A program made the translations under genes and the position numbers. Positions 1-7,961 of a stretch of 64,000 nucleotides of DNA are shown piece by piece; positions within the stretch are counted from its first letter, which is position 1; each line of letters starts with the position of its first letter. This DNA comes from Klebsormidium nitens. Its lineage: Eukaryota > Plantae > Klebsormidiophyceae. The stretch lies in NCBI GenBank assembly GCA_000708835.1, contig DF236984.1, positions 186,001-250,000 of the forward strand, given 5' to 3'. The notes under the pieces are model-generated. The model was not told the origin of the DNA. It did no database searches and saw nothing but the letters and a program-made list of their open reading frames with translations.

Positions 1-419
1 CTGGAGAGAGTACGAAGGACGTAAGTTTTCAACAATTTCCGACTTTTTGAAGAGAAAGTTGACCCCTTTCGGAAGGCAGGGTCCCTGATTGGTGCCTCAA
101 CTTCTTAAAACTCTCCACGTGGCCAGAGCTCTCGGAGCCGCAGAGTCACCCTATGAGGCCGCTCCGAAAACCGCAACACTGATCTCCAAACACGCCAAAT
201 CCACTTCATCCGTCGCTTGGCATCCCATATCGCGACTCTCTGACTGCATGCGGCGTCTGTCGAGATGATACAACGTCCGTATGCTACTTCTTGTCTCGAA
301 AACCTTCCTACAGTAGTCAACGTTTTGAACCCTGAAGTAGCAGCCACGCAAAGATAGGCATTGCAGTGTTCAAACGGCCTGTGAAAGCGGTGGAACCAAG
401 AGGAGGTTTGTTTACCCAC

Positions 420-3400
420 CTGCATTCGTAGAGCTCGCTACAGCTGGCGTGGCTCTCGTTCATAAGCTGTCCCAAGTCCTCCAGAACTTGATCGGACGAA
501 AAGGACGCCCCGCTGCTGCAAACGGGACACGTGTAAGTTGCTCGGTGTAGAGTCGGTCACATGTGTATGGAAGTAAAGTCCAACACATACAATTGGCGAA
601 TCCCAGTATTCCAAATTCGCCCTGCCGTTACAGCAAGGTGTGGGCCGGGTAACAAGGCCAGTCAATCGCCGAAACAACTTTTTGGTGCGCCGTACTTTAG
701 TTGGAGTAATTTGGATCGGTCGTCCAGCCCAGTGCTTGTGCCAACCACTTTTTTCAGGATCGTTGGTAACAACCAGAGTGGGGGAGGGCGTGCCACGTGG
801 CACTCTCTCGCAGGCTTGACAGATATGATGCAGGGGTAAAGGAGGCTCTACTGAGAAGCGCGTCCTACGAGCTGCCGTTTCAAGTCAGAGAATCCAAAAG
901 AGCACGGAGACACATGGTTGATACGGGGCAGGAAGCGCGAGTGTAAAACAGCTCTCGCTGACCTGGATTGTGCACGCGCCGCGGTGTCCCGGAAGGCGTA
1001 GACGCGCTCCTTTTCGCTGAAGACGTGCTTGGCCCTCTGCGGAGCGGTCACTTTTCGCGTGATCAGTATTCTTGAGGAATGGTGCAAAATATGCAATCAC
1101 AACGGCGCCGTCCGCTCAGGAAAAGAAACTCAGTCTCTGCGAGTTGGTCACGAGGAGTGGTTGTCTACATGACCAAAGGAGTACACGGGGGAGTGTAAGC
1201 TGTGCAACGGAGCTCTAGATCGAAGCGCAGACAAGGCGCGGACCCCGATGCTGTTAGTTTAATGCGGACGAGTGGCAGATTCTAAAAGCGCAGGAAGCTT
1301 TTCCGGAAGCACCTCATGCTCGCAGGCCTTTTTAAGAACGCCGATGGACTACCACGCAATTTTAAGTGCTCTTATGGTCGCTTAAAAATCGAAACAACGC
1401 CTGCAAATTCAAGAACACCCGAAGACGGGAACCCAGAAACGAAAGACGGAATCTTCCGTACTGACTCGGAAAATTATCTTTTGATAAGTATTCATCATTT
1501 AAAGATTATTTTGGTTAAGATGGAGATCAGAAACTACATTGGACCCGGCGGGAGAAGAGGAGGATAAACAATATTTTTCGAATTCCAGCCCAGATTGCTG
1601 ACAAAGAAGGCAAATGGAAAAATTGTAAAGTAGTATCTCTCATAGCCGGGTGAAACCTGAGAATTTTCGAAAACGATTATTCACGGTGCTTGCGGGTGAC
1701 CTCTCAAGTCACTGCGGTAATTGGTGGAGAGGGCGTGCCAGAAAGTGGAACAAGGGACCCAAGCGGCAGCGTTTGACGACCCACCTTGTACAGCGCAAAG
1801 TGCTTCGCTGCCGCCAGGACCGCGAGCGAGGTCGGCGAGCTTTTCATGATCGTCTCCAGCTTCTCACCAAGAAGCTCCTCCAACTCCTCCGCAACGTACG
1901 GCTCCGGCTTCAAGTGAGCCTGCGGGACGGAGAGCGGAACCGGAACCGGTGAGTACAATAGCAAGCGGAAATGCCAACGGATTTTCAGAAATTAGAGTCT
2001 GCCAGGACGGCAAGCGAGGTGGGCGGGTCTTCCATGGTCGTCTCCAGCTTTTTCTGGAGCAGCCCCTCCAACTCCGCGGCAACATTCTGCTCCGGCTTCG
2101 GCCTGCGCAACGGAAAGCGGAACCGGAACCGATGAGTACAGTAGTAAGTGGAATTGACCACAGCTTTTTCGAGGATAGAGTCTGCCAGGACGGCAAGCGA
2201 GGTGGGCGGGTCTTTCATGATCGTGTCCAGCTTTTCCCCGAGCACCTCCTCCAATCTTTTGGCCCCATACGGCTCCGGCTTCAAGTGGGCCTGCGCAACG
2301 GCAAGCGGAACCGGAACCGGTGAACCCCCTGATAGTCGACTTGCTTGAGGAGGAAAATCCAAGAAGCTCCGATTATGGTGATCGAGGTGGGGATCCCTTT
2401 TCGATCGCCAGGAGGCTTCCCTAATTCGACGGCGGTGTACGACTCTCGCTTCAAGTGAGCTTAAGCAACGGGGCATGAAAGCGGAACAGTTCAGTATGCT
2501 GATATTCGACTTTTGAGACCCTGCGGGAATACGACCCTGTCAGAACCCCACGCAGACTTTGGATGCTCTTCATGGAGTCCCTGACTTTTCGAGAAGCACC
2601 AGAATTGACGGCGACATGCAGTTCCGCCTTGAACAGGGCCTGTAGTATGGAAAGCAAGAATCTGAGAGGAAAGTATGTTATCTTCGCAATTTTTGTAGGA
2701 CCTGCCCCGATGTCTTAAGGGGCAGAAACAAGGATACAAGAAACAAAAAGCAACGCGCAAAATGACCAAGGAGATTGCGGAGGGTAACTACTGAACCACA
2801 GAAGGGATCCGTAAGAAGAAGGTTCCGTCTCGTTTTTGTGCATTGAAAGGAGCGTGGAGTAAGCAGACGAACTCCTACCGTCAGAAGAAATGAGGAGATT
2901 TACTTCGTCGGACACATGTCTCGGCCAGAAAAGTATTGTCAACTATACGGTGATTGTCTGCAGGAAATAGATCAGATTCTGTAGCGGCATATAGGTGCCA
3001 GTGCTTCAGGAGCAGGGCTGTCGGTGCCTCTCAAAACAGGCTTCGAGGGCGACAAACTCTCCTTCTCATCCCCGAATCGGCCAGCGGCTTTCTCTTCTCT
3101 GCTACTCGCGTGCTGAACGTCGCAACCTGGAGCCTGATACCAGACTCCCAAGCGCAATAACTCGTGACGCCCTATTTCCTGCGCTGCAAGCACGCTTACC
3201 TCGACGGCTGGCAGAGGCCCCTCTCCTCCCAGGCCGGGCGCAGCCGCCGAGAGCATGTCCTCAATCTCGCCCAGCGTGTTGATCGCATACACCTCCTGTT
3301 TCGGCAGCCCCAGTCGCAGTCCTAGCACCATCTGCGGAGATAGTGAGAGTATGGAAAAGAAGCAAAGCGGGTATGAAGGGTCCGTTGGGCAGGGCCGGTT

Positions 3401-6400
3401 GCGATGTGCAAAGGAGTAAGTAACGGCTCCGAGAGGGCTGTGGGACCAAGTTGCATAAGAAAGACAGCAGCGAAGAGTTCCAACAGGAATCGACTTCCGT
3501 GATTATTAAGCAGCAAGCCCCGCCTGATGATACAGTTCTAGCTTTGGACCCAACCCAGGGTGGCAGTCCGCTTCCAAGCGATTTTCGTACTGTACAGTTT
3601 CATAAATCCGAAGAGTCACCAAATAAAAGTTTACTGCAAGCATGCGCATGGATGGAGAGTGACAGTTCCTGCACGAGCCGGTGGGTGATGCGAAAGCGTG
3701 CTGAACCTTGAATGCGAACCTTTAATACCAAACCTCATGAAATCTGGAGACTGGAGCTCATTAAATCTGGACACTGGAGGTAAAGTGCAATACAGGGTAC
3801 GGTGCAACGGCAAGGCGCTTACCGCTGCCAGTCTGCATTCTACGACCCGCATGTTGTAGTTAACGGCGGCTGTCTCGGCCTTGTTGGACTCGGTCAGAGA
3901 GTTGGCGATGACGAAGGTACCCCCCTCCGGCAAAGCGACGTCGGTGGCTCGCACCGGGTTGAAGTCGATCAGGAGGGCGACTCCGGGCTTGGCCATGATG
4001 GAAATGGCCTGCAAGTCCAGGTTACGAGACAATCTATGATCAGTAATTTTTGGGATCCAAGCCCTATATAAATCCACCTCCCTAATATCCTGAGACTCTG
4101 AAGCCGTATGCTTGTAAATTCGACCAAAGAGACTTTTGTTAGAAAGATTTCTCAAAATCCAATGCGCACAACTCGTTGCCACATCTTGCTTCTGATTCGT
4201 TATGGTCTCCTGTCTTGAACGGTTCTGGCGAATCTCTTTGCTATATGCAACGTCCTTGTTCTTCAAAATCTTGGTATCCGTCAGAAGGGCCCCAAAGCTT
4301 TTTCCGGGCACCTTTTTCCGGCAAGTAACCAGCTCTTTGCGGCGGTCCATCCGAGCAATACAAAGTTAGTTGCTTCGTCGTCACGTGAACCAAGAGGCTC
4401 CACTTTCTCTCTCAGCGGAGCACGGGTTCCAATCAGAAGCGAATGAGCACTTTACAGAAGCAGTACGGTAGTCTCACCTAGGGATGTTACTCTAAGACAT
4501 AAAGGATACTCAGCGTGATCTAACACGGGGGATCATGGTCGTTGTCTGAACGCCAGTGGCTGATGACCGGACCCCCTACCGCAAGCACGGGGTAATCACC
4601 ACCGTAATCTACAGTAACCGTAGTGATGCCCTTATGAAGAATCTAGACCCCCAGTTTCTCACCTGGTCCATTCCGCCGGATTGTGTGCCGATGTGGCGCT
4701 CGCACTTGCAGCAGAGCTCCGCCATGTCGGTCTGTAGACACGCGGACACGAGTCAGTTTGAGTACGCCGAGAGGCATCCACAACATACTTAGCAACCACA
4801 AGACTTGACGTCATCCACACGTGCATCCGGCATGTCTCCGGCACCCTCCCTGAAATTCTGTGTGCAGCTTGAACAACGAGCCGCAGTTTGCAACTAGGGA
4901 CGAGGAGACAAGGCCACACTTCGGCGAGCAGGTTGACGATCGGACTAGATTTCGAGCTTCGTGGGCGCATCTTGCGATTGAAGCTCAGAGTTTTTGTGCC
5001 AAGGACAACGAAGATGATCCAAGACCACAAAACAGCGTCACTGTCACAGGGTGCCGTCCAGCCAGAGGAAACGCTGCGACAGAAAGCAGCACCGCGCTGG
5101 TGTGACGCCTCTCCGAAGCAGCTTGTTGGCTGCCTACGTGTACCACAGCAAAGCGCAGGTGAACACTCGTGGGTACTTGCACAACGAAACGGGACCGGTC
5201 CATGACCCGACTAAAAACGTTCACCTTGACCTCTTGGCGTCTGTTTGACAACCGTGTCCATAAGCGTGGCCGATGAAACGGTGCCGATGAACAGGTTAAA
5301 TACAGCGTTGTGACTCCACAATCCCGCAGACGCCGGCTCACCTTGCTGACGTCAGCACCAGCCGCCGCAGCGACCGCGACGGCCGATGCGCACACGAGCG
5401 CGGACGAGCTCGAGAGCCCCGCGCCTAGACAAAAGCGATACCACCCTTAGAAAGGAAACCCCAAAGAAGCACTTGAGCAGGGGACAGTTTTGTCATAAAG
5501 GAAGGTTACCTGTGAGAAGTTGAGCCCATGAGCGGCCATCACGGCGCCGGCAGAGGCGCACACAATCGCTGCCGAGCTGGAGAGTCCCGCACCTACAGAA
5601 AGCGTCTGACCTTTCAGCCAAGCCGGAAATTCTAGTGCTCCAAGCCCGACTTCCAATGAGAGCTCTCCTACGTTCTTCCGAAAAGCTCAAGCGAAGGCTC
5701 AATACGAAGTCGAAGTGCGATGCTTTGGCAAAGGTAACTCGACTTGAAATCAGGTCTCTTTCTGTGGGTTCTAACTTCTAGGATAGAGGGCAGTGAGATG
5801 CGCATCAGAAGCTGCCAGCTCATTCTCGCCCTGACAATTTGTGGTGCAGAGAGTTTTCAACGAAGATCCGAATCATCGTTTGAAAAGAACGGCTGAGCAA
5901 AGGAAGTGGTTGATGAAGAACGCGACTGACATCACAGGAGGCTTAGAAACAGAGGAAGAGTATTCGAGCTCACAGGAACTGGAAAATGCATGCGCGGCAA
6001 ACCTCAGTGACGGCGCCAGCAAAACGGACATCCACCAATCGACCCATGACTTGCAGGCTGGCTGGAGCAGGAGCCTTCACGCCCCTCTTTTCAGAGGCCT
6101 TCAAGAATGCACAGCTTAAAAATGGGCACGACGCCCAAGCTGGCAGGGGCAGCGACTTCTATTTCACACTTTTCCAAAGGCCTTCAAGAGTCCATAGCTT
6201 ATCCAGAAACCCATAGCTTATAAAACTGACAAGCTTACCAGTAGGCACGATGCCATCGACCATAACGTCCAGGCTGGCGGGGGTGGGGACTTCGACGTCT
6301 TCCTTTCCAGAGGCCTTGAGCCGCTCTAGATGCTCCCAGACGCCCTTGTAGCCGCACACGAAGTAGTTGGCCCATGAGTGGTTGCCACGATCTACCTCCT

Positions 6401-7961
6401 GCAGAGCACACATCCAAAGGCTGAGGAAGAAATAGATGGATGAGGAAAGAAGAGGGGGGAGCAGGGAGCTGGGGAATAACGTCAAACAAACGCTGTTTGT
6501 CCAGAAACGTCAGAGCAGAGGAGAAGGTAAGCTCCATAACTTGGCTTTGAGGGTGAGATGCAATCAACCGGTGCTGTATCACTTGCAGGAAGTGGTGTCT
6601 GTTGGCTCTCAGTATTGTGAGATCGTTTAGCAATATGACAGGGATTAAGGAAGCACTAGTGTGGTGCAAGGCACTTTGACTCATTCGAGCATGACCTCAG
6701 CTGCCTGAGGAGAGATATGGGATAAGCTCAGATTACCAATGAAGAAGCTCAACTTAAGATGTTTCACCGAAAACATTATTTGCTTGCTTCAGCTCACCAA
6801 CACAACTCCCAGTATCAGCATCGCGCTGGTTGCGTAAGAGAGACAAAGGGAGCGGGAGTAGTGCCCTCTACATGCACCATGCAAGCGGACACCCAGAAAA
6901 CCTGGAGCACCAAAGACGTTCGAAGGTTCCTTGAAGCTGACTCGCCCTCTGTTCCTGAAACCTGGACCTATCAAGCAAAACACCAGCAGGTTCCGTGCAA
7001 ATACACTAGGCTTTTCAATCTCTACCAAGCTCCTGACCTGAGAAGGATCCGCAGGAAACACGACTGCAGGGTACTTCTTGGAGTTGACATTGGCAATCCG
7101 GAGCGATGGCGCTGACCCATCGTCTGGACGCTTTCGAACAGCCACGATTGTGTCTTGACGGATGGCCATCGGGAGCACAGAGTAGCCTTCATAATCAATG
7201 TGTTCGCCGATCAAGTTCACGCGCCCTGCAAAGGACATACATAACCTGTCATATTGCCTCAGCTGACACAGTGGACCTGATGAAACAGTCTGACCGCAAA
7301 TGTGAAGAGCCAGCTGTTGACATGCCTACATGTGGTCCAAGTTGCGAAGTTTAACCTGCAAGTGGCACCCTTCACAGAGGGTCGTATATTCAATCTCAAT
7401 GAGTACTTTCCTATCTTGGAGCACGAAGCGTGGTGGTGGCCACAAATGGTCAAAGCGGGAGTCAAATATGTTCCCACAGACTGAACTGGCTGTGTGGAAA
7501 AAATGAAAATTCAACTTTGTGTCGCACACTTCTTTCTCCAGATTAGACTGGATGTTTGAACCGTTTGTAACCCCTGCTATCCTGCCACTGAATGCAAGCA
7601 GAGCACCTCAAGCTCGTGCACATCCAGGAACATGCAGGCACATCACCTTAGTTTTCTGCCATCAAGCAACTGCACTTTGAGAACCTCAAATGCAATCACA
7701 ATACTTGACCTTCAATCAACTTTAGAAATGTGTCCTTCCTTGAGCACTTAGCTCACCTGGAGAGCGGACAAACAGCACCGGCGGCGCGCCATACGCCTGC
7801 AAAAACTCCAATGCAAGTCCCTCATAGCGCGCATCCGCTGCAGCAAGCTCCTCCGCATCATGCCCATGCACCGGCCGCAGGCTTGAGTAGACTGGAATTG
7901 AACCCTCAGAAACCCCTCCCGCAGTCTCCTGCTTCGCATCTGCAGCAACAAGGGACGCCAT
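420..7961 (-). CDS. GALK: Galactokinase (GHMP kinase, plant GALK/GALK2 type), multi-exon; C-terminal exons lie beyond the left edge of the window
   Basis: Exons with GT-AG borders and consistent phase: 7961-7757, 7225-7038, 6398-6239, 5592-5510 or 5424-5342, 4731-4663, 4008-3823, 3331-3200, 1919-1785, 1036-963, 515-420. Motifs [91 protein letters not shown]. Confidence 0.96.
1785..2320 (-). repeat. Three tandem ~185 bp units: GALK exon 1919-1785 with its acceptor, plus two intronic partial copies (~2320-2178, ~2145-1994)
   Basis: Each unit has the CCGGTTCCGGTTCCGCT...GCAG acceptor followed by a diverged (AH)LKPEPY...TSLAVLA coding sequence; the copies lack the exon 3' end and donor. Confidence 0.9.
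5342..5424 (-). other. GALK: GALK alternative exon 4b (83 nt), [28 protein letters not shown]
   Basis: Acceptor ttttgtctag, donor AAG|gtgagc, same length and phases as 4a, open frame. Confidence 0.85.
5510..5592 (-). other. GALK: GALK alternative exon 4a (83 nt), [28 protein letters not shown]
   Basis: Acceptor ttctgtag, donor CAG|gtaacc, phase 1 in and phase 0 out. Confidence 0.85.
6025..6190 (-). repeat. Two degenerate intronic copies of the 3' part of GALK exon 6398-6239
   Basis: Plus strand ttttcagaggccttcaaga and tttccaaaggccttcaaga, each preceded by gctggc..gg..g, mirror the exon sequence caggctggcgggggtggggac...tttccagaggccttgag. Confidence 0.65.

What the first reader, a model, noticed from the sequence alone, without database searches (positions are those of the whole stretch)
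5342..5592. Candidate mutually exclusive exon pair swapping the galactokinase ATP-binding motif
Seen: two adjacent 83-nt exons, each with intact acceptor and donor, identical phases (1 in, 0 out), open frames of 28 codons and an 85-nt spacer. Including both shifts the frame, the usual signature of mutually exclusive exons. Known: they encode GHMP motif 2 (PxGxGLSSSA). From recall, 4a ([10 protein letters not shown]) resembles plant GALK and 4b ([10 protein letters not shown]) resembles animal GALK2/GalNAc kinase. Both kept the motif while diverging downstream, suggesting selection on both. Inference: one gene may make two sugar kinases with different specificity or kinetics. Mutually exclusive exons are considered rare in the green lineage.
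Basis: partly seen in the sequence, partly recalled or inferred. Interest (0 to 1): 0.85.

Follow-up and report, generated by a model that had tools for sequence, protein, structure and literature searches.

The report
Twin either/or exons in algal galactokinase
The galactokinase gene of the alga Klebsormidium nitens has two old, intact copies of the exon for its ATP-binding loop. Both have been kept as protein-coding sequence, and RNA joins one or the other to the exon before, but a working K. nitens mRNA carrying the second copy has not yet been seen.

Summary
On the minus strand, the K. nitens galactokinase gene (NCBI model P0202, 528 aa, 100% match) has two 83-nt exons: 4a (5592-5510) and 4b (5424-5342). 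They are 85 nt apart, share the same phase, both have AG/GT sites, and are 65% identical in nt and 68% in aa. Using both or neither breaks the frame.

RNA contigs from four studies all show 3-4a-5-6. One run also shows exon 3 spliced to 4b, skipping 4a. There the 4b donor joins a cryptic acceptor at 5133, and the RNA runs unspliced into exon 5 with a stop codon. The productive 4b-to-5 joint was not seen in K. nitens.

A cDNA contig from a related alga (L001, 89% aa identity) uses a 4b-type exon joined directly to exon 5. Between K. nitens 4b and that exon, the first 20 codons have 15 nt changes and no amino-acid change, while synonymous sites are saturated. So 4b has been under protein-level selection in the K. 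nitens lineage. Exon 4a keeps ancestral plant-type residues, so the duplication probably predates the species split.

My reading is an old homologous mutually exclusive exon pair, with 4a as the default. Two enzymes with different specificity remains untested. This scan has noted other either/or exon pairs in other genes of this genome, but not in this gene.

The parts
7757..7961 (-). Exon 1 coding part (ATG at 7961)
   Evidence: RNA joint 7756/7226. The spliced translation equals P0202.
7038..7225 (-). Exon 2, galactose-binding signature
   Evidence: RNA joints. Pfam PF10509 58.6 bits.
6239..6398 (-). Exon 3, the constitutive exon upstream of the pair. Its donor at 6239 is joined to 4a or to 4b.
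   Evidence: Joints to 5592 in four runs and to 5424 in run X1.
6044..6201 (-). Two decayed tandem copies of the 3' end of exon 3 inside intron 3; no donor site kept.
   Evidence: Direct repeats D2-D4. Local alignment score 44 against a shuffle maximum of 29.
5510..5592 (-). Exon 4a (83 nt), the default copy: phosphate-binding loop (motif 2), the following helix and a short loop (residues 185-212).
   Evidence: In the main contig of all four runs. Used in NCBI model P0202. Model has loop 181-189 and helix 190-205.
5425..5509 (-). 85-nt spacer intron between 4a and 4b.
   Evidence: Sequence. No 5510->5424 joint seen.
5342..5424 (-). Exon 4b (83 nt), the alternative copy with the same phase and an open frame.
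   Evidence: Spliced from exon 3 in one X1 contig. Orthologous to the exon used in relative L001. Zero aa changes in 20 codons against 15 nt changes.
5134..5341 (-). 208-nt GT..AG intron removed in the only 4b-containing RNA seen.
   Evidence: Joint 5342->5133 in X1.
4732..5133 (-). Segment kept in that RNA, from the cryptic acceptor at 5133 to exon 5. In the 4b frame it reads 29 codons and then a stop at 5049-5047.
   Evidence: The contig is continuous over 5132-4706. Translation.
4663..4731 (-). Exon 5 ([23 protein letters not shown]), the constitutive exon downstream of the pair.
   Evidence: Joints. Identical in aa to the relative.
3823..4008 (-). Exon 6.
   Evidence: Joints. Translation.
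422..3331 (-). Exons 7-10 (3331-3200, 1919-1785, 1036-965, 517-422). Residues 443-528 lie beyond the window start.
   Evidence: Exact peptide matches of P0202.

Best explanation
Exons 4a and 4b are an old tandem duplicate of the galactokinase exon that encodes the phosphate-binding loop, the helix after it and a short connecting loop. They work as a mutually exclusive pair. The exon 3 donor is joined to one acceptor or the other. Because each exon is 83 nt, an mRNA with both or with neither is frameshifted and hits an early stop, so only single-copy mRNAs can make the enzyme. In K. nitens under the sampled conditions 4a is the default. Exon 4b is a rarely chosen copy that has nevertheless been kept as protein-coding sequence. 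The inference is that a 3-4b-5 mRNA, and a second kinase isoform differing at 9 of 28 residues, is made under some condition or stage. Shown here: the anatomy, the 3-4a-5 and 3-4b joints, productive 4b-type use in a relative, and protein-level selection on 4b. Inferred: the productive 4b mRNA in K. nitens, how the choice is made, and any functional difference.
For: In the RNA, spliced contigs from four studies carry 3-4a-5-6, one X1 contig joins 6239 to 5424 and skips 4a, and no contig holds both exons. The gene is K. nitens galactokinase: P0202 is 100% identical over 297 aa, TIGR00131 scores 285 bits above its cutoff, and the best solved relative is 2a2c. The relative's cDNA L001 reads exon 3 | 4b-type exon | exon 5 in frame. 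In codon counts between K. nitens and L001, the background pS is 0.63 and pN 0.065 over 262 codons. For the first 20 codons of 4b, Sd is 14 and Nd is 1, and the one counted nonsynonymous step is a Leu-to-Leu path, so there are no aa changes. In simulation, neutral drift of 4b for 0.2 substitutions per site gives P about 1e-4 of keeping those 20 residues, and at most about 0.07 is compatible, against roughly 0.7 for the whole branch. Exon 4b and the relative share the derived residues S8, A19 and V26, while 4a keeps the plant consensus A8, M19, N25 and F26. In the tree, 4b and the relative pair with support 93/87. Other exon duplicates in the same gene (exon 3 tail, exon 8) have lost donors or frames. 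Exon 4b has not.
Against: The productive joint 5342->4731 was not seen in K. nitens. The only 4b RNA (one run of four, one low-depth contig) joins 4b to a cryptic acceptor at 5133, keeps 401 nt of intron and has a stop 29 codons after 4b. That contig is unbroken at the end of 4b, so in that run a 4b->5 joint was at best much rarer. The public model uses only 4a. Contigs cannot show absence or level. A recent retirement of 4b, within the last ~10% of the branch, cannot be excluded. The tree rests on 28 columns, and a 4a+4b clade is not rejected (AU p = 0.13). Only one relative is available, as cDNA, so it is unknown whether it also has a 4a-type exon. No mechanism for the choice was found: inverted repeats are at chance level.
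Confidence: 0.55

Rival explanations
1. Reciprocal exon choice with recent retirement. The ancestor had both copies. The relative now uses 4b and K. nitens now uses 4a. In K. nitens 4b stopped being coding only recently, and today gives only unproductive RNA.
For: All four runs show 4a as the assembled form. The only 4b RNA carries a stop through the 5133 acceptor. The relative's assembled mRNA has the 4b type. Simulation allows a neutral period of up to about 0.07 substitutions per site.
Against: Both splice sites, the frame and all 20 motif-side residues are intact. The 4b donor AAG|GTGAGC looks at least as good as that of 4a. This rival needs the loss to fall in a narrow recent window. Other duplicates in the same gene show what decay looks like.
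Confidence: 0.25
2. Exon 4b acts in K. nitens only as a poison exon. Choosing it sends the transcript to decay, through the 5133 acceptor and the stop, which lowers galactokinase output without making a second protein.
For: The observed 4b RNA has a premature stop upstream of several exon junctions.
Against: A poison exon needs no particular amino-acid sequence. Here the changes since the split from the relative are synonymous (15 nt changes, 0 aa changes in 20 codons), which is selection on the protein. The stop lies outside 4b, in retained intron.
Confidence: 0.07
3. Exon 4b is a chance-preserved relic of local tandem duplication with no function, like the decayed exon 3 tail and exon 8 copies in the same gene.
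For: The gene is rich in small tandem duplications. The 4a-versus-4b comparison alone is not decisive (differences by codon position 9/5/14).
Against: P of keeping the 20 residues under neutrality for the whole branch was 0 in 20,000 simulations. Both splice sites are used in RNA. The orthologous exon is used productively in a relative. The Pfam score equals that of 4a.
Confidence: 0.03

Closest known systems
Homologous mutually exclusive exon clusters made by tandem exon duplication, as defined by the WebScipio/Kassiopeia criteria (PMC3923563)
   Same: The exons are adjacent, of equal length and in the same reading phase. They are similar in sequence and have intact splice sites. The frame is lost if both or neither is used.
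   Different: The Kassiopeia paper lists 99 candidate exons in Arabidopsis and states that none of the internal ones was annotated as mutually exclusive. Here there is RNA evidence for the upstream joint of both copies, plus cross-species evidence of selection. The downstream productive joint of the second copy is still missing in K. nitens.
Mammalian ketohexokinase KHK-A / KHK-C
   Same: It is a sugar kinase whose two isozymes come from alternative splicing, with mutually exclusive expression in most cells and different kinetics (PMC11332825). From my own knowledge, adjacent duplicated exons 3A/3C are swapped.
   Different: It belongs to a different kinase fold (ribokinase-like, not GHMP) and to animals. 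Both isoforms are proven at mRNA, protein and enzyme level, which is not so here.
Human N-acetylgalactosamine kinase GALK2 (PDB 2a2c) and plant GAL1-type galactokinases
   Same: This is the same family. P0202 matches 2a2c at 352 bits and plant galactokinases at 57-60% identity. The SSSSALVC of 4b equals the human string, and 4a follows the plant consensus.
   Different: Those genes are not known to me to carry a duplicated motif 2 exon. The likeness of 4b to GALK2 is a few residues and says nothing about GalNAc use.
Other either/or exon pairs noted by this scan in K. nitens (DTC carrier, prolyl 4-hydroxylase, NHX antiporter, MATE, CNGC and others)
   Same: They are in the same genome and have the same layout of tandem look-alike exons. 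Several are reported by those notes to have RNA support.
   Different: They are in different genes. Those are AI notes that I did not check.

Membership tests
Homologous mutually exclusive exon pair | Adjacent exons of like length, the same phase, and intact AG/GT sites | tested here: met
   Both are 83 nt, phase 1 in and 0 out, with AG and GT present.
Homologous mutually exclusive exon pair | The exons are homologous to each other | tested here: met
   54/83 nt and 19/28 aa identical. Direct repeat D1. PF00288 60.3 and 60.4 bits.
Homologous mutually exclusive exon pair | Both or neither gives a non-functional mRNA | tested here: met
   Stops at codon 276 (both) and codon 257 (neither).
Homologous mutually exclusive exon pair | Each exon is joined to the upstream constitutive exon in RNA, and no RNA holds both | tested here: met
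   6239->5592 in four runs, 6239->5424 in X1, and no 5510->5424 joint. These are contigs only, so absence is weak evidence.
Homologous mutually exclusive exon pair | Each exon is joined to the downstream constitutive exon, giving two productive mRNAs in the same organism | tested here: inconclusive
   4a->5 is seen in four runs. 4b->5 is not seen in K. nitens, only 4b->5133 with a stop. The 4b-type->5 joint is seen in relative L001.
Homologous mutually exclusive exon pair | Both copies are kept by selection on the protein | tested here: met
   4a is the default coding exon. For 4b, 0 aa changes against 15 nt changes in 20 codons versus the relative, with P about 1e-4 or less under prolonged neutrality.
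Galactokinase (GHMP kinase superfamily) | Galactose-binding signature, GHMP N and C domains, and a family model above cutoff | tested here: met
   PF10509 in exon 2 and PF00288 over exons 4-5. PF08544 precomputed for P0202. TIGR00131 285.1 bits against cutoff 226.65.
GalNAc kinase (GALK2-like specificity) for the 4b isoform | Phosphorylates GalNAc | not testable with these tools
   Only sequence likeness of a few residues. An enzyme assay is needed.
Poison exon / unproductive splicing | Inclusion leads to a premature stop, with conservation not at the protein level | tested here: not met
   A premature stop is present in the seen RNA, but the conservation pattern of 4b is synonymous-only, which is protein-level.

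The most novel reading that the evidence does not exclude
K. nitens makes two galactokinase isoforms by swapping the ATP-loop-plus-helix cassette. The switch is older than the split between Klebsormidium lineages and is regulated by condition. The isoforms differ in kinetics, nucleotide use or partner binding. Taken with the other pairs this scan has noted in the genome, it would mean that homologous mutually exclusive splicing is a common way of making isozymes in this streptophyte alga, contrary to the view that it is rare in the green lineage.
Probability: 0.3. Interest if true: 0.7.

Novelty: new member of a known kind. Interest (0 to 1): 0.55.

Why it matters
Documented mutually exclusive exons are few in plants and green algae. 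This pair sits in a central sugar-salvage enzyme and swaps a clean structural unit, the phosphate-binding loop and its helix. It also has cross-species evidence that both copies were kept as protein for a very long time. If the second isoform is confirmed, it gives a simple test case for why a single-copy metabolic gene keeps two versions of its ATP loop. It would also add to a growing list of such pairs in K. nitens, and it would correct the public gene model, which lists only one isoform.

Tried and rejected
1. I suspected that the segment after the 5133 acceptor was a decayed copy of exon 5, which would make 4b plus 5' a duplicated two-exon unit. Local alignment of exon 5 against 5341-4760 scored no better than shuffles (656 of 1000 shuffles reached the observed score), and the protein-level matches were trivial. 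I rejected the idea.

2. I looked for docking/selector-type competing RNA structures. The inverted repeats in 4650-6300 have arms of 12-20 nt at 70-92% complementarity, about what chance gives for 1.65 kb by my own estimate. With no relative's intron available, covariation cannot be tested, so I did not pursue this.

3. I searched the 5.8-billion protein set with a 69-aa 4b construct for a K. nitens open reading frame carrying 4b+5. Nothing from K. nitens appeared, but short 4a forms were absent too, and P0202 has a single member on one genomic contig. The blank is therefore uninformative.

4. Two scans of metagenome contigs, one with a degenerate exon 5 DNA pattern and one with an alignment-based query, found nothing. 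The first pattern fits L001 itself, so that collection does not hold L001's sample.

5. My first working idea was that 4b is a decaying relic. I dropped it after the comparison with L001.

6. The 4a-versus-4b comparison alone (9/5/14 differences by codon position) does not separate selection from drift.

Full report
**What is there**

The finding lies in a minus-strand gene. I rebuilt its exons from the RNA joints and from exact peptide matches:
- exon 1: ATG at 7961, ending at 7757
- exon 2: 7225-7038
- exon 3: 6398-6239
- exon 4a: 5592-5510
- exon 4b: 5424-5342
- exon 5: 4731-4663
- exon 6: 4008-3823
- exons 7-10: 3331-3200, 1919-1785, 1036-965 and 517-422

The last 86 residues lie beyond the start of the window. 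The spliced translation with 4a is 100% identical over 297 residues to P0202, named 'Galactokinase [Klebsormidium nitens]' by NCBI. The organism and gene are therefore settled, and the public model uses 4a only.

Family membership is clear:
- Exon 2 carries the galactose-binding signature PF10509.
- Exons 4-5 match PF00288.
- TIGR00131 galactokinase scores 285 bits against a cutoff of 227.
- The closest solved structure is human GalNAc kinase 2a2c at 352 bits.

- Both exons are 83 nt, follow an AG, precede a GT, enter in phase 1 and leave in phase 0, and are separated by 85 nt.
- They are 54/83 identical in nucleotides: 33/42 in the first half and 21/41 in the second. They are 19/28 identical in residues.
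- They fit the GHMP N-domain profile equally well (60.3 and 60.4 bits).
- Using both gives a stop at codon 276, and using neither gives a stop at codon 257.
- In an AlphaFold model of P0202 (mean pLDDT 90) the exon encodes a clean unit. It comprises the loop 181-189 that holds motif 2, the helix 190-205 and the short loop 206-211. The next helix starts with exon 5.

**RNA evidence in K. nitens**

One sequencing-run search gave about 20 holders in 7 studies. I laid four of them, from four studies, on 3800-7950. They are kept as assembled contigs. The contigs are spliced, so they derive from RNA.

- All four runs have one contig with 1-2-3-4a-5-6.
- In run X1 a second contig of 540 nt consists of the last 30 nt of exon 3, all of 4b, a GT..AG joint from 5342 to 5133, and then unbroken sequence from 5132 to 4706, that is 26 nt into exon 5.
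- So the cell does choose 4b instead of 4a at the exon 3 donor, and both 4b splice sites are used.
- The downstream partner seen is a cryptic acceptor, not exon 5. In the 4b frame the retained piece reads 29 codons and then a stop.
- That contig is bounded by the two branch points (end of exon 3, start of exon 5) and is unbroken at the end of 4b. In that run a direct 4b-to-5 joint was therefore at best much rarer.
- No contig joins 4a to 4b.
- Contigs show presence only, not absence or level.

**The relative changes the reading**

A search with P0202 found only one close relative, P0348, with 89% identity over the last 314 residues. It sits on an intron-less 1186-nt JGI contig (L001). The 186 nt upstream of the called ATG are in frame. 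They read the end of exon 3, then a 4b-type exon ([28 protein letters not shown]), then exon 5 directly. A 4b-type exon is thus used productively in a related alga.

**Selection on 4b**

- Over 262 codons of the other exons, K. nitens and L001 differ at 63% of synonymous sites, which is saturated (dS about 1.4), and at 6.5% of nonsynonymous sites.
- In the first 20 codons of 4b there are 15 nucleotide differences and no amino-acid difference. The last 7 codons are fast-evolving (pN 0.42).
- In simulation, if 4b had drifted neutrally in the K. nitens lineage for 0.2 substitutions per site, those 20 residues would survive with P about 1e-4. Only about 0.07 or less is compatible, against roughly 0.7 for the whole branch.
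- Exon 4b has therefore been protein-coding in the K. nitens lineage for about nine tenths or more of the time since the split.
- Other small tandem duplicates in the same gene have lost donors, gained a stop or acquired indels. These are two copies of the exon 3 tail in intron 3 and two copies of exon 8 in intron 7.

**Age and polarity**

- I compared the exons with 122 distinct plant-type galactokinase segments. Exon 4a is the closer one in 111 cases.
- Exon 4a keeps the consensus A8, M19, N25 and F26, and has its own changes G16 and Q28.
- Exon 4b and the relative share the derived S8, A19 and V26.
- A 28-column tree pairs 4b with the relative (support 93/87). A 4a+4b clade is 12 log-likelihood units worse but is not rejected (AU p = 0.13).
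- The likeliest history is a duplication before the two lineages split, with both copies kept in K. nitens.

**How it most likely works**

Exon 3 is spliced to one of two acceptors. The 83-nt length makes double or zero inclusion unproductive, so mutual exclusion at the level of usable mRNA follows from the frame alone.

I found no sign of competing RNA structures. A likely branch site (ctaag, about 24 nt from the 4b acceptor) lies about 60 nt from the 4a donor, so steric exclusion is not compelling; this is my reading of the sequence and is untested.

Exon 4a is the default. That 4b yields a second enzyme under some condition is inferred from selection, not seen. The 9 differing residues lie in the first turn of the helix (A/S at residue 192), along the helix, and in the loop after it. 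From general knowledge of GHMP kinases this region binds the ATP phosphates, while sugar contacts come mainly from the N-terminal signature and the GGMDQ region. A change of sugar specificity is therefore less likely than a change in kinetics or stability.

**Rivals**

- Recent retirement of 4b in K. nitens, with each lineage settling on one copy, fits the RNA data and cannot be excluded.
- A pure poison-exon role does not explain synonymous-only change.
- A chance relic is excluded by the simulation.

**Comparison and novelty**

This is a homologous mutually exclusive exon pair of the kind defined by Kassiopeia/WebScipio. For Arabidopsis that paper lists only predictions, with no annotated internal cases (PMC3923563). 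The nearest functional analogue is mammalian ketohexokinase A/C (PMC11332825). My paper searches found nothing on duplicated exons in galactokinase and nothing relevant on Klebsormidium splicing. Notes from this scan report other such pairs in other K. nitens genes. I did not check them.

I class this as a new member of a known kind, of moderate interest, with one decisive observation still missing.

Noticed in passing
window 6044-6201 (minus strand, intron 3): There are two decayed tandem copies of the last ~90 nt of exon 3 ([18 protein letters not shown]-like frames). The donor site is lost in both.
   Followed up: partly
window 1943-2323 (minus strand, intron 7): There are two extra tandem copies of exon 8 with a period of about 185 nt and 67-81% nt identity. 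The copy at 2290 keeps the acceptor and an open frame ([38 protein letters not shown]) but lacks the exon's tail and donor. The copy at 2107 has a 5-nt deletion and a stop. I laid no RNA data on this part.
   Followed up: partly
window 5133 and 4732-5133 (minus strand): A cryptic acceptor (gtacacgtag|GCAGCC) is used with the 4b donor in run X1, and the 401 nt up to exon 5 are kept. Other runs show low-depth unspliced fragments across 4803-5327.
   Followed up: partly
L001 (JGI sample 3300038448, contig Ga0401388_06619): This is an intron-less 1186-nt contig from an unnamed Klebsormidium-like alga. Its gene call starts at an internal Met, although the frame is open to the contig's first base. 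Synonymous sites against K. nitens are saturated, so this is a distant congener or sister genus.
   Followed up: partly
window 1-520: The galactokinase gene runs off the start of the window. Residues 443-528 of P0202 are not in it.
   Followed up: yes
same genome, other pieces (scan notes): The scan holds 21 notes about duplicated, possibly mutually exclusive exons in K. nitens. Several follow-ups report RNA support. Together they hint at a genome-wide habit that deserves one joint analysis.
   Followed up: no
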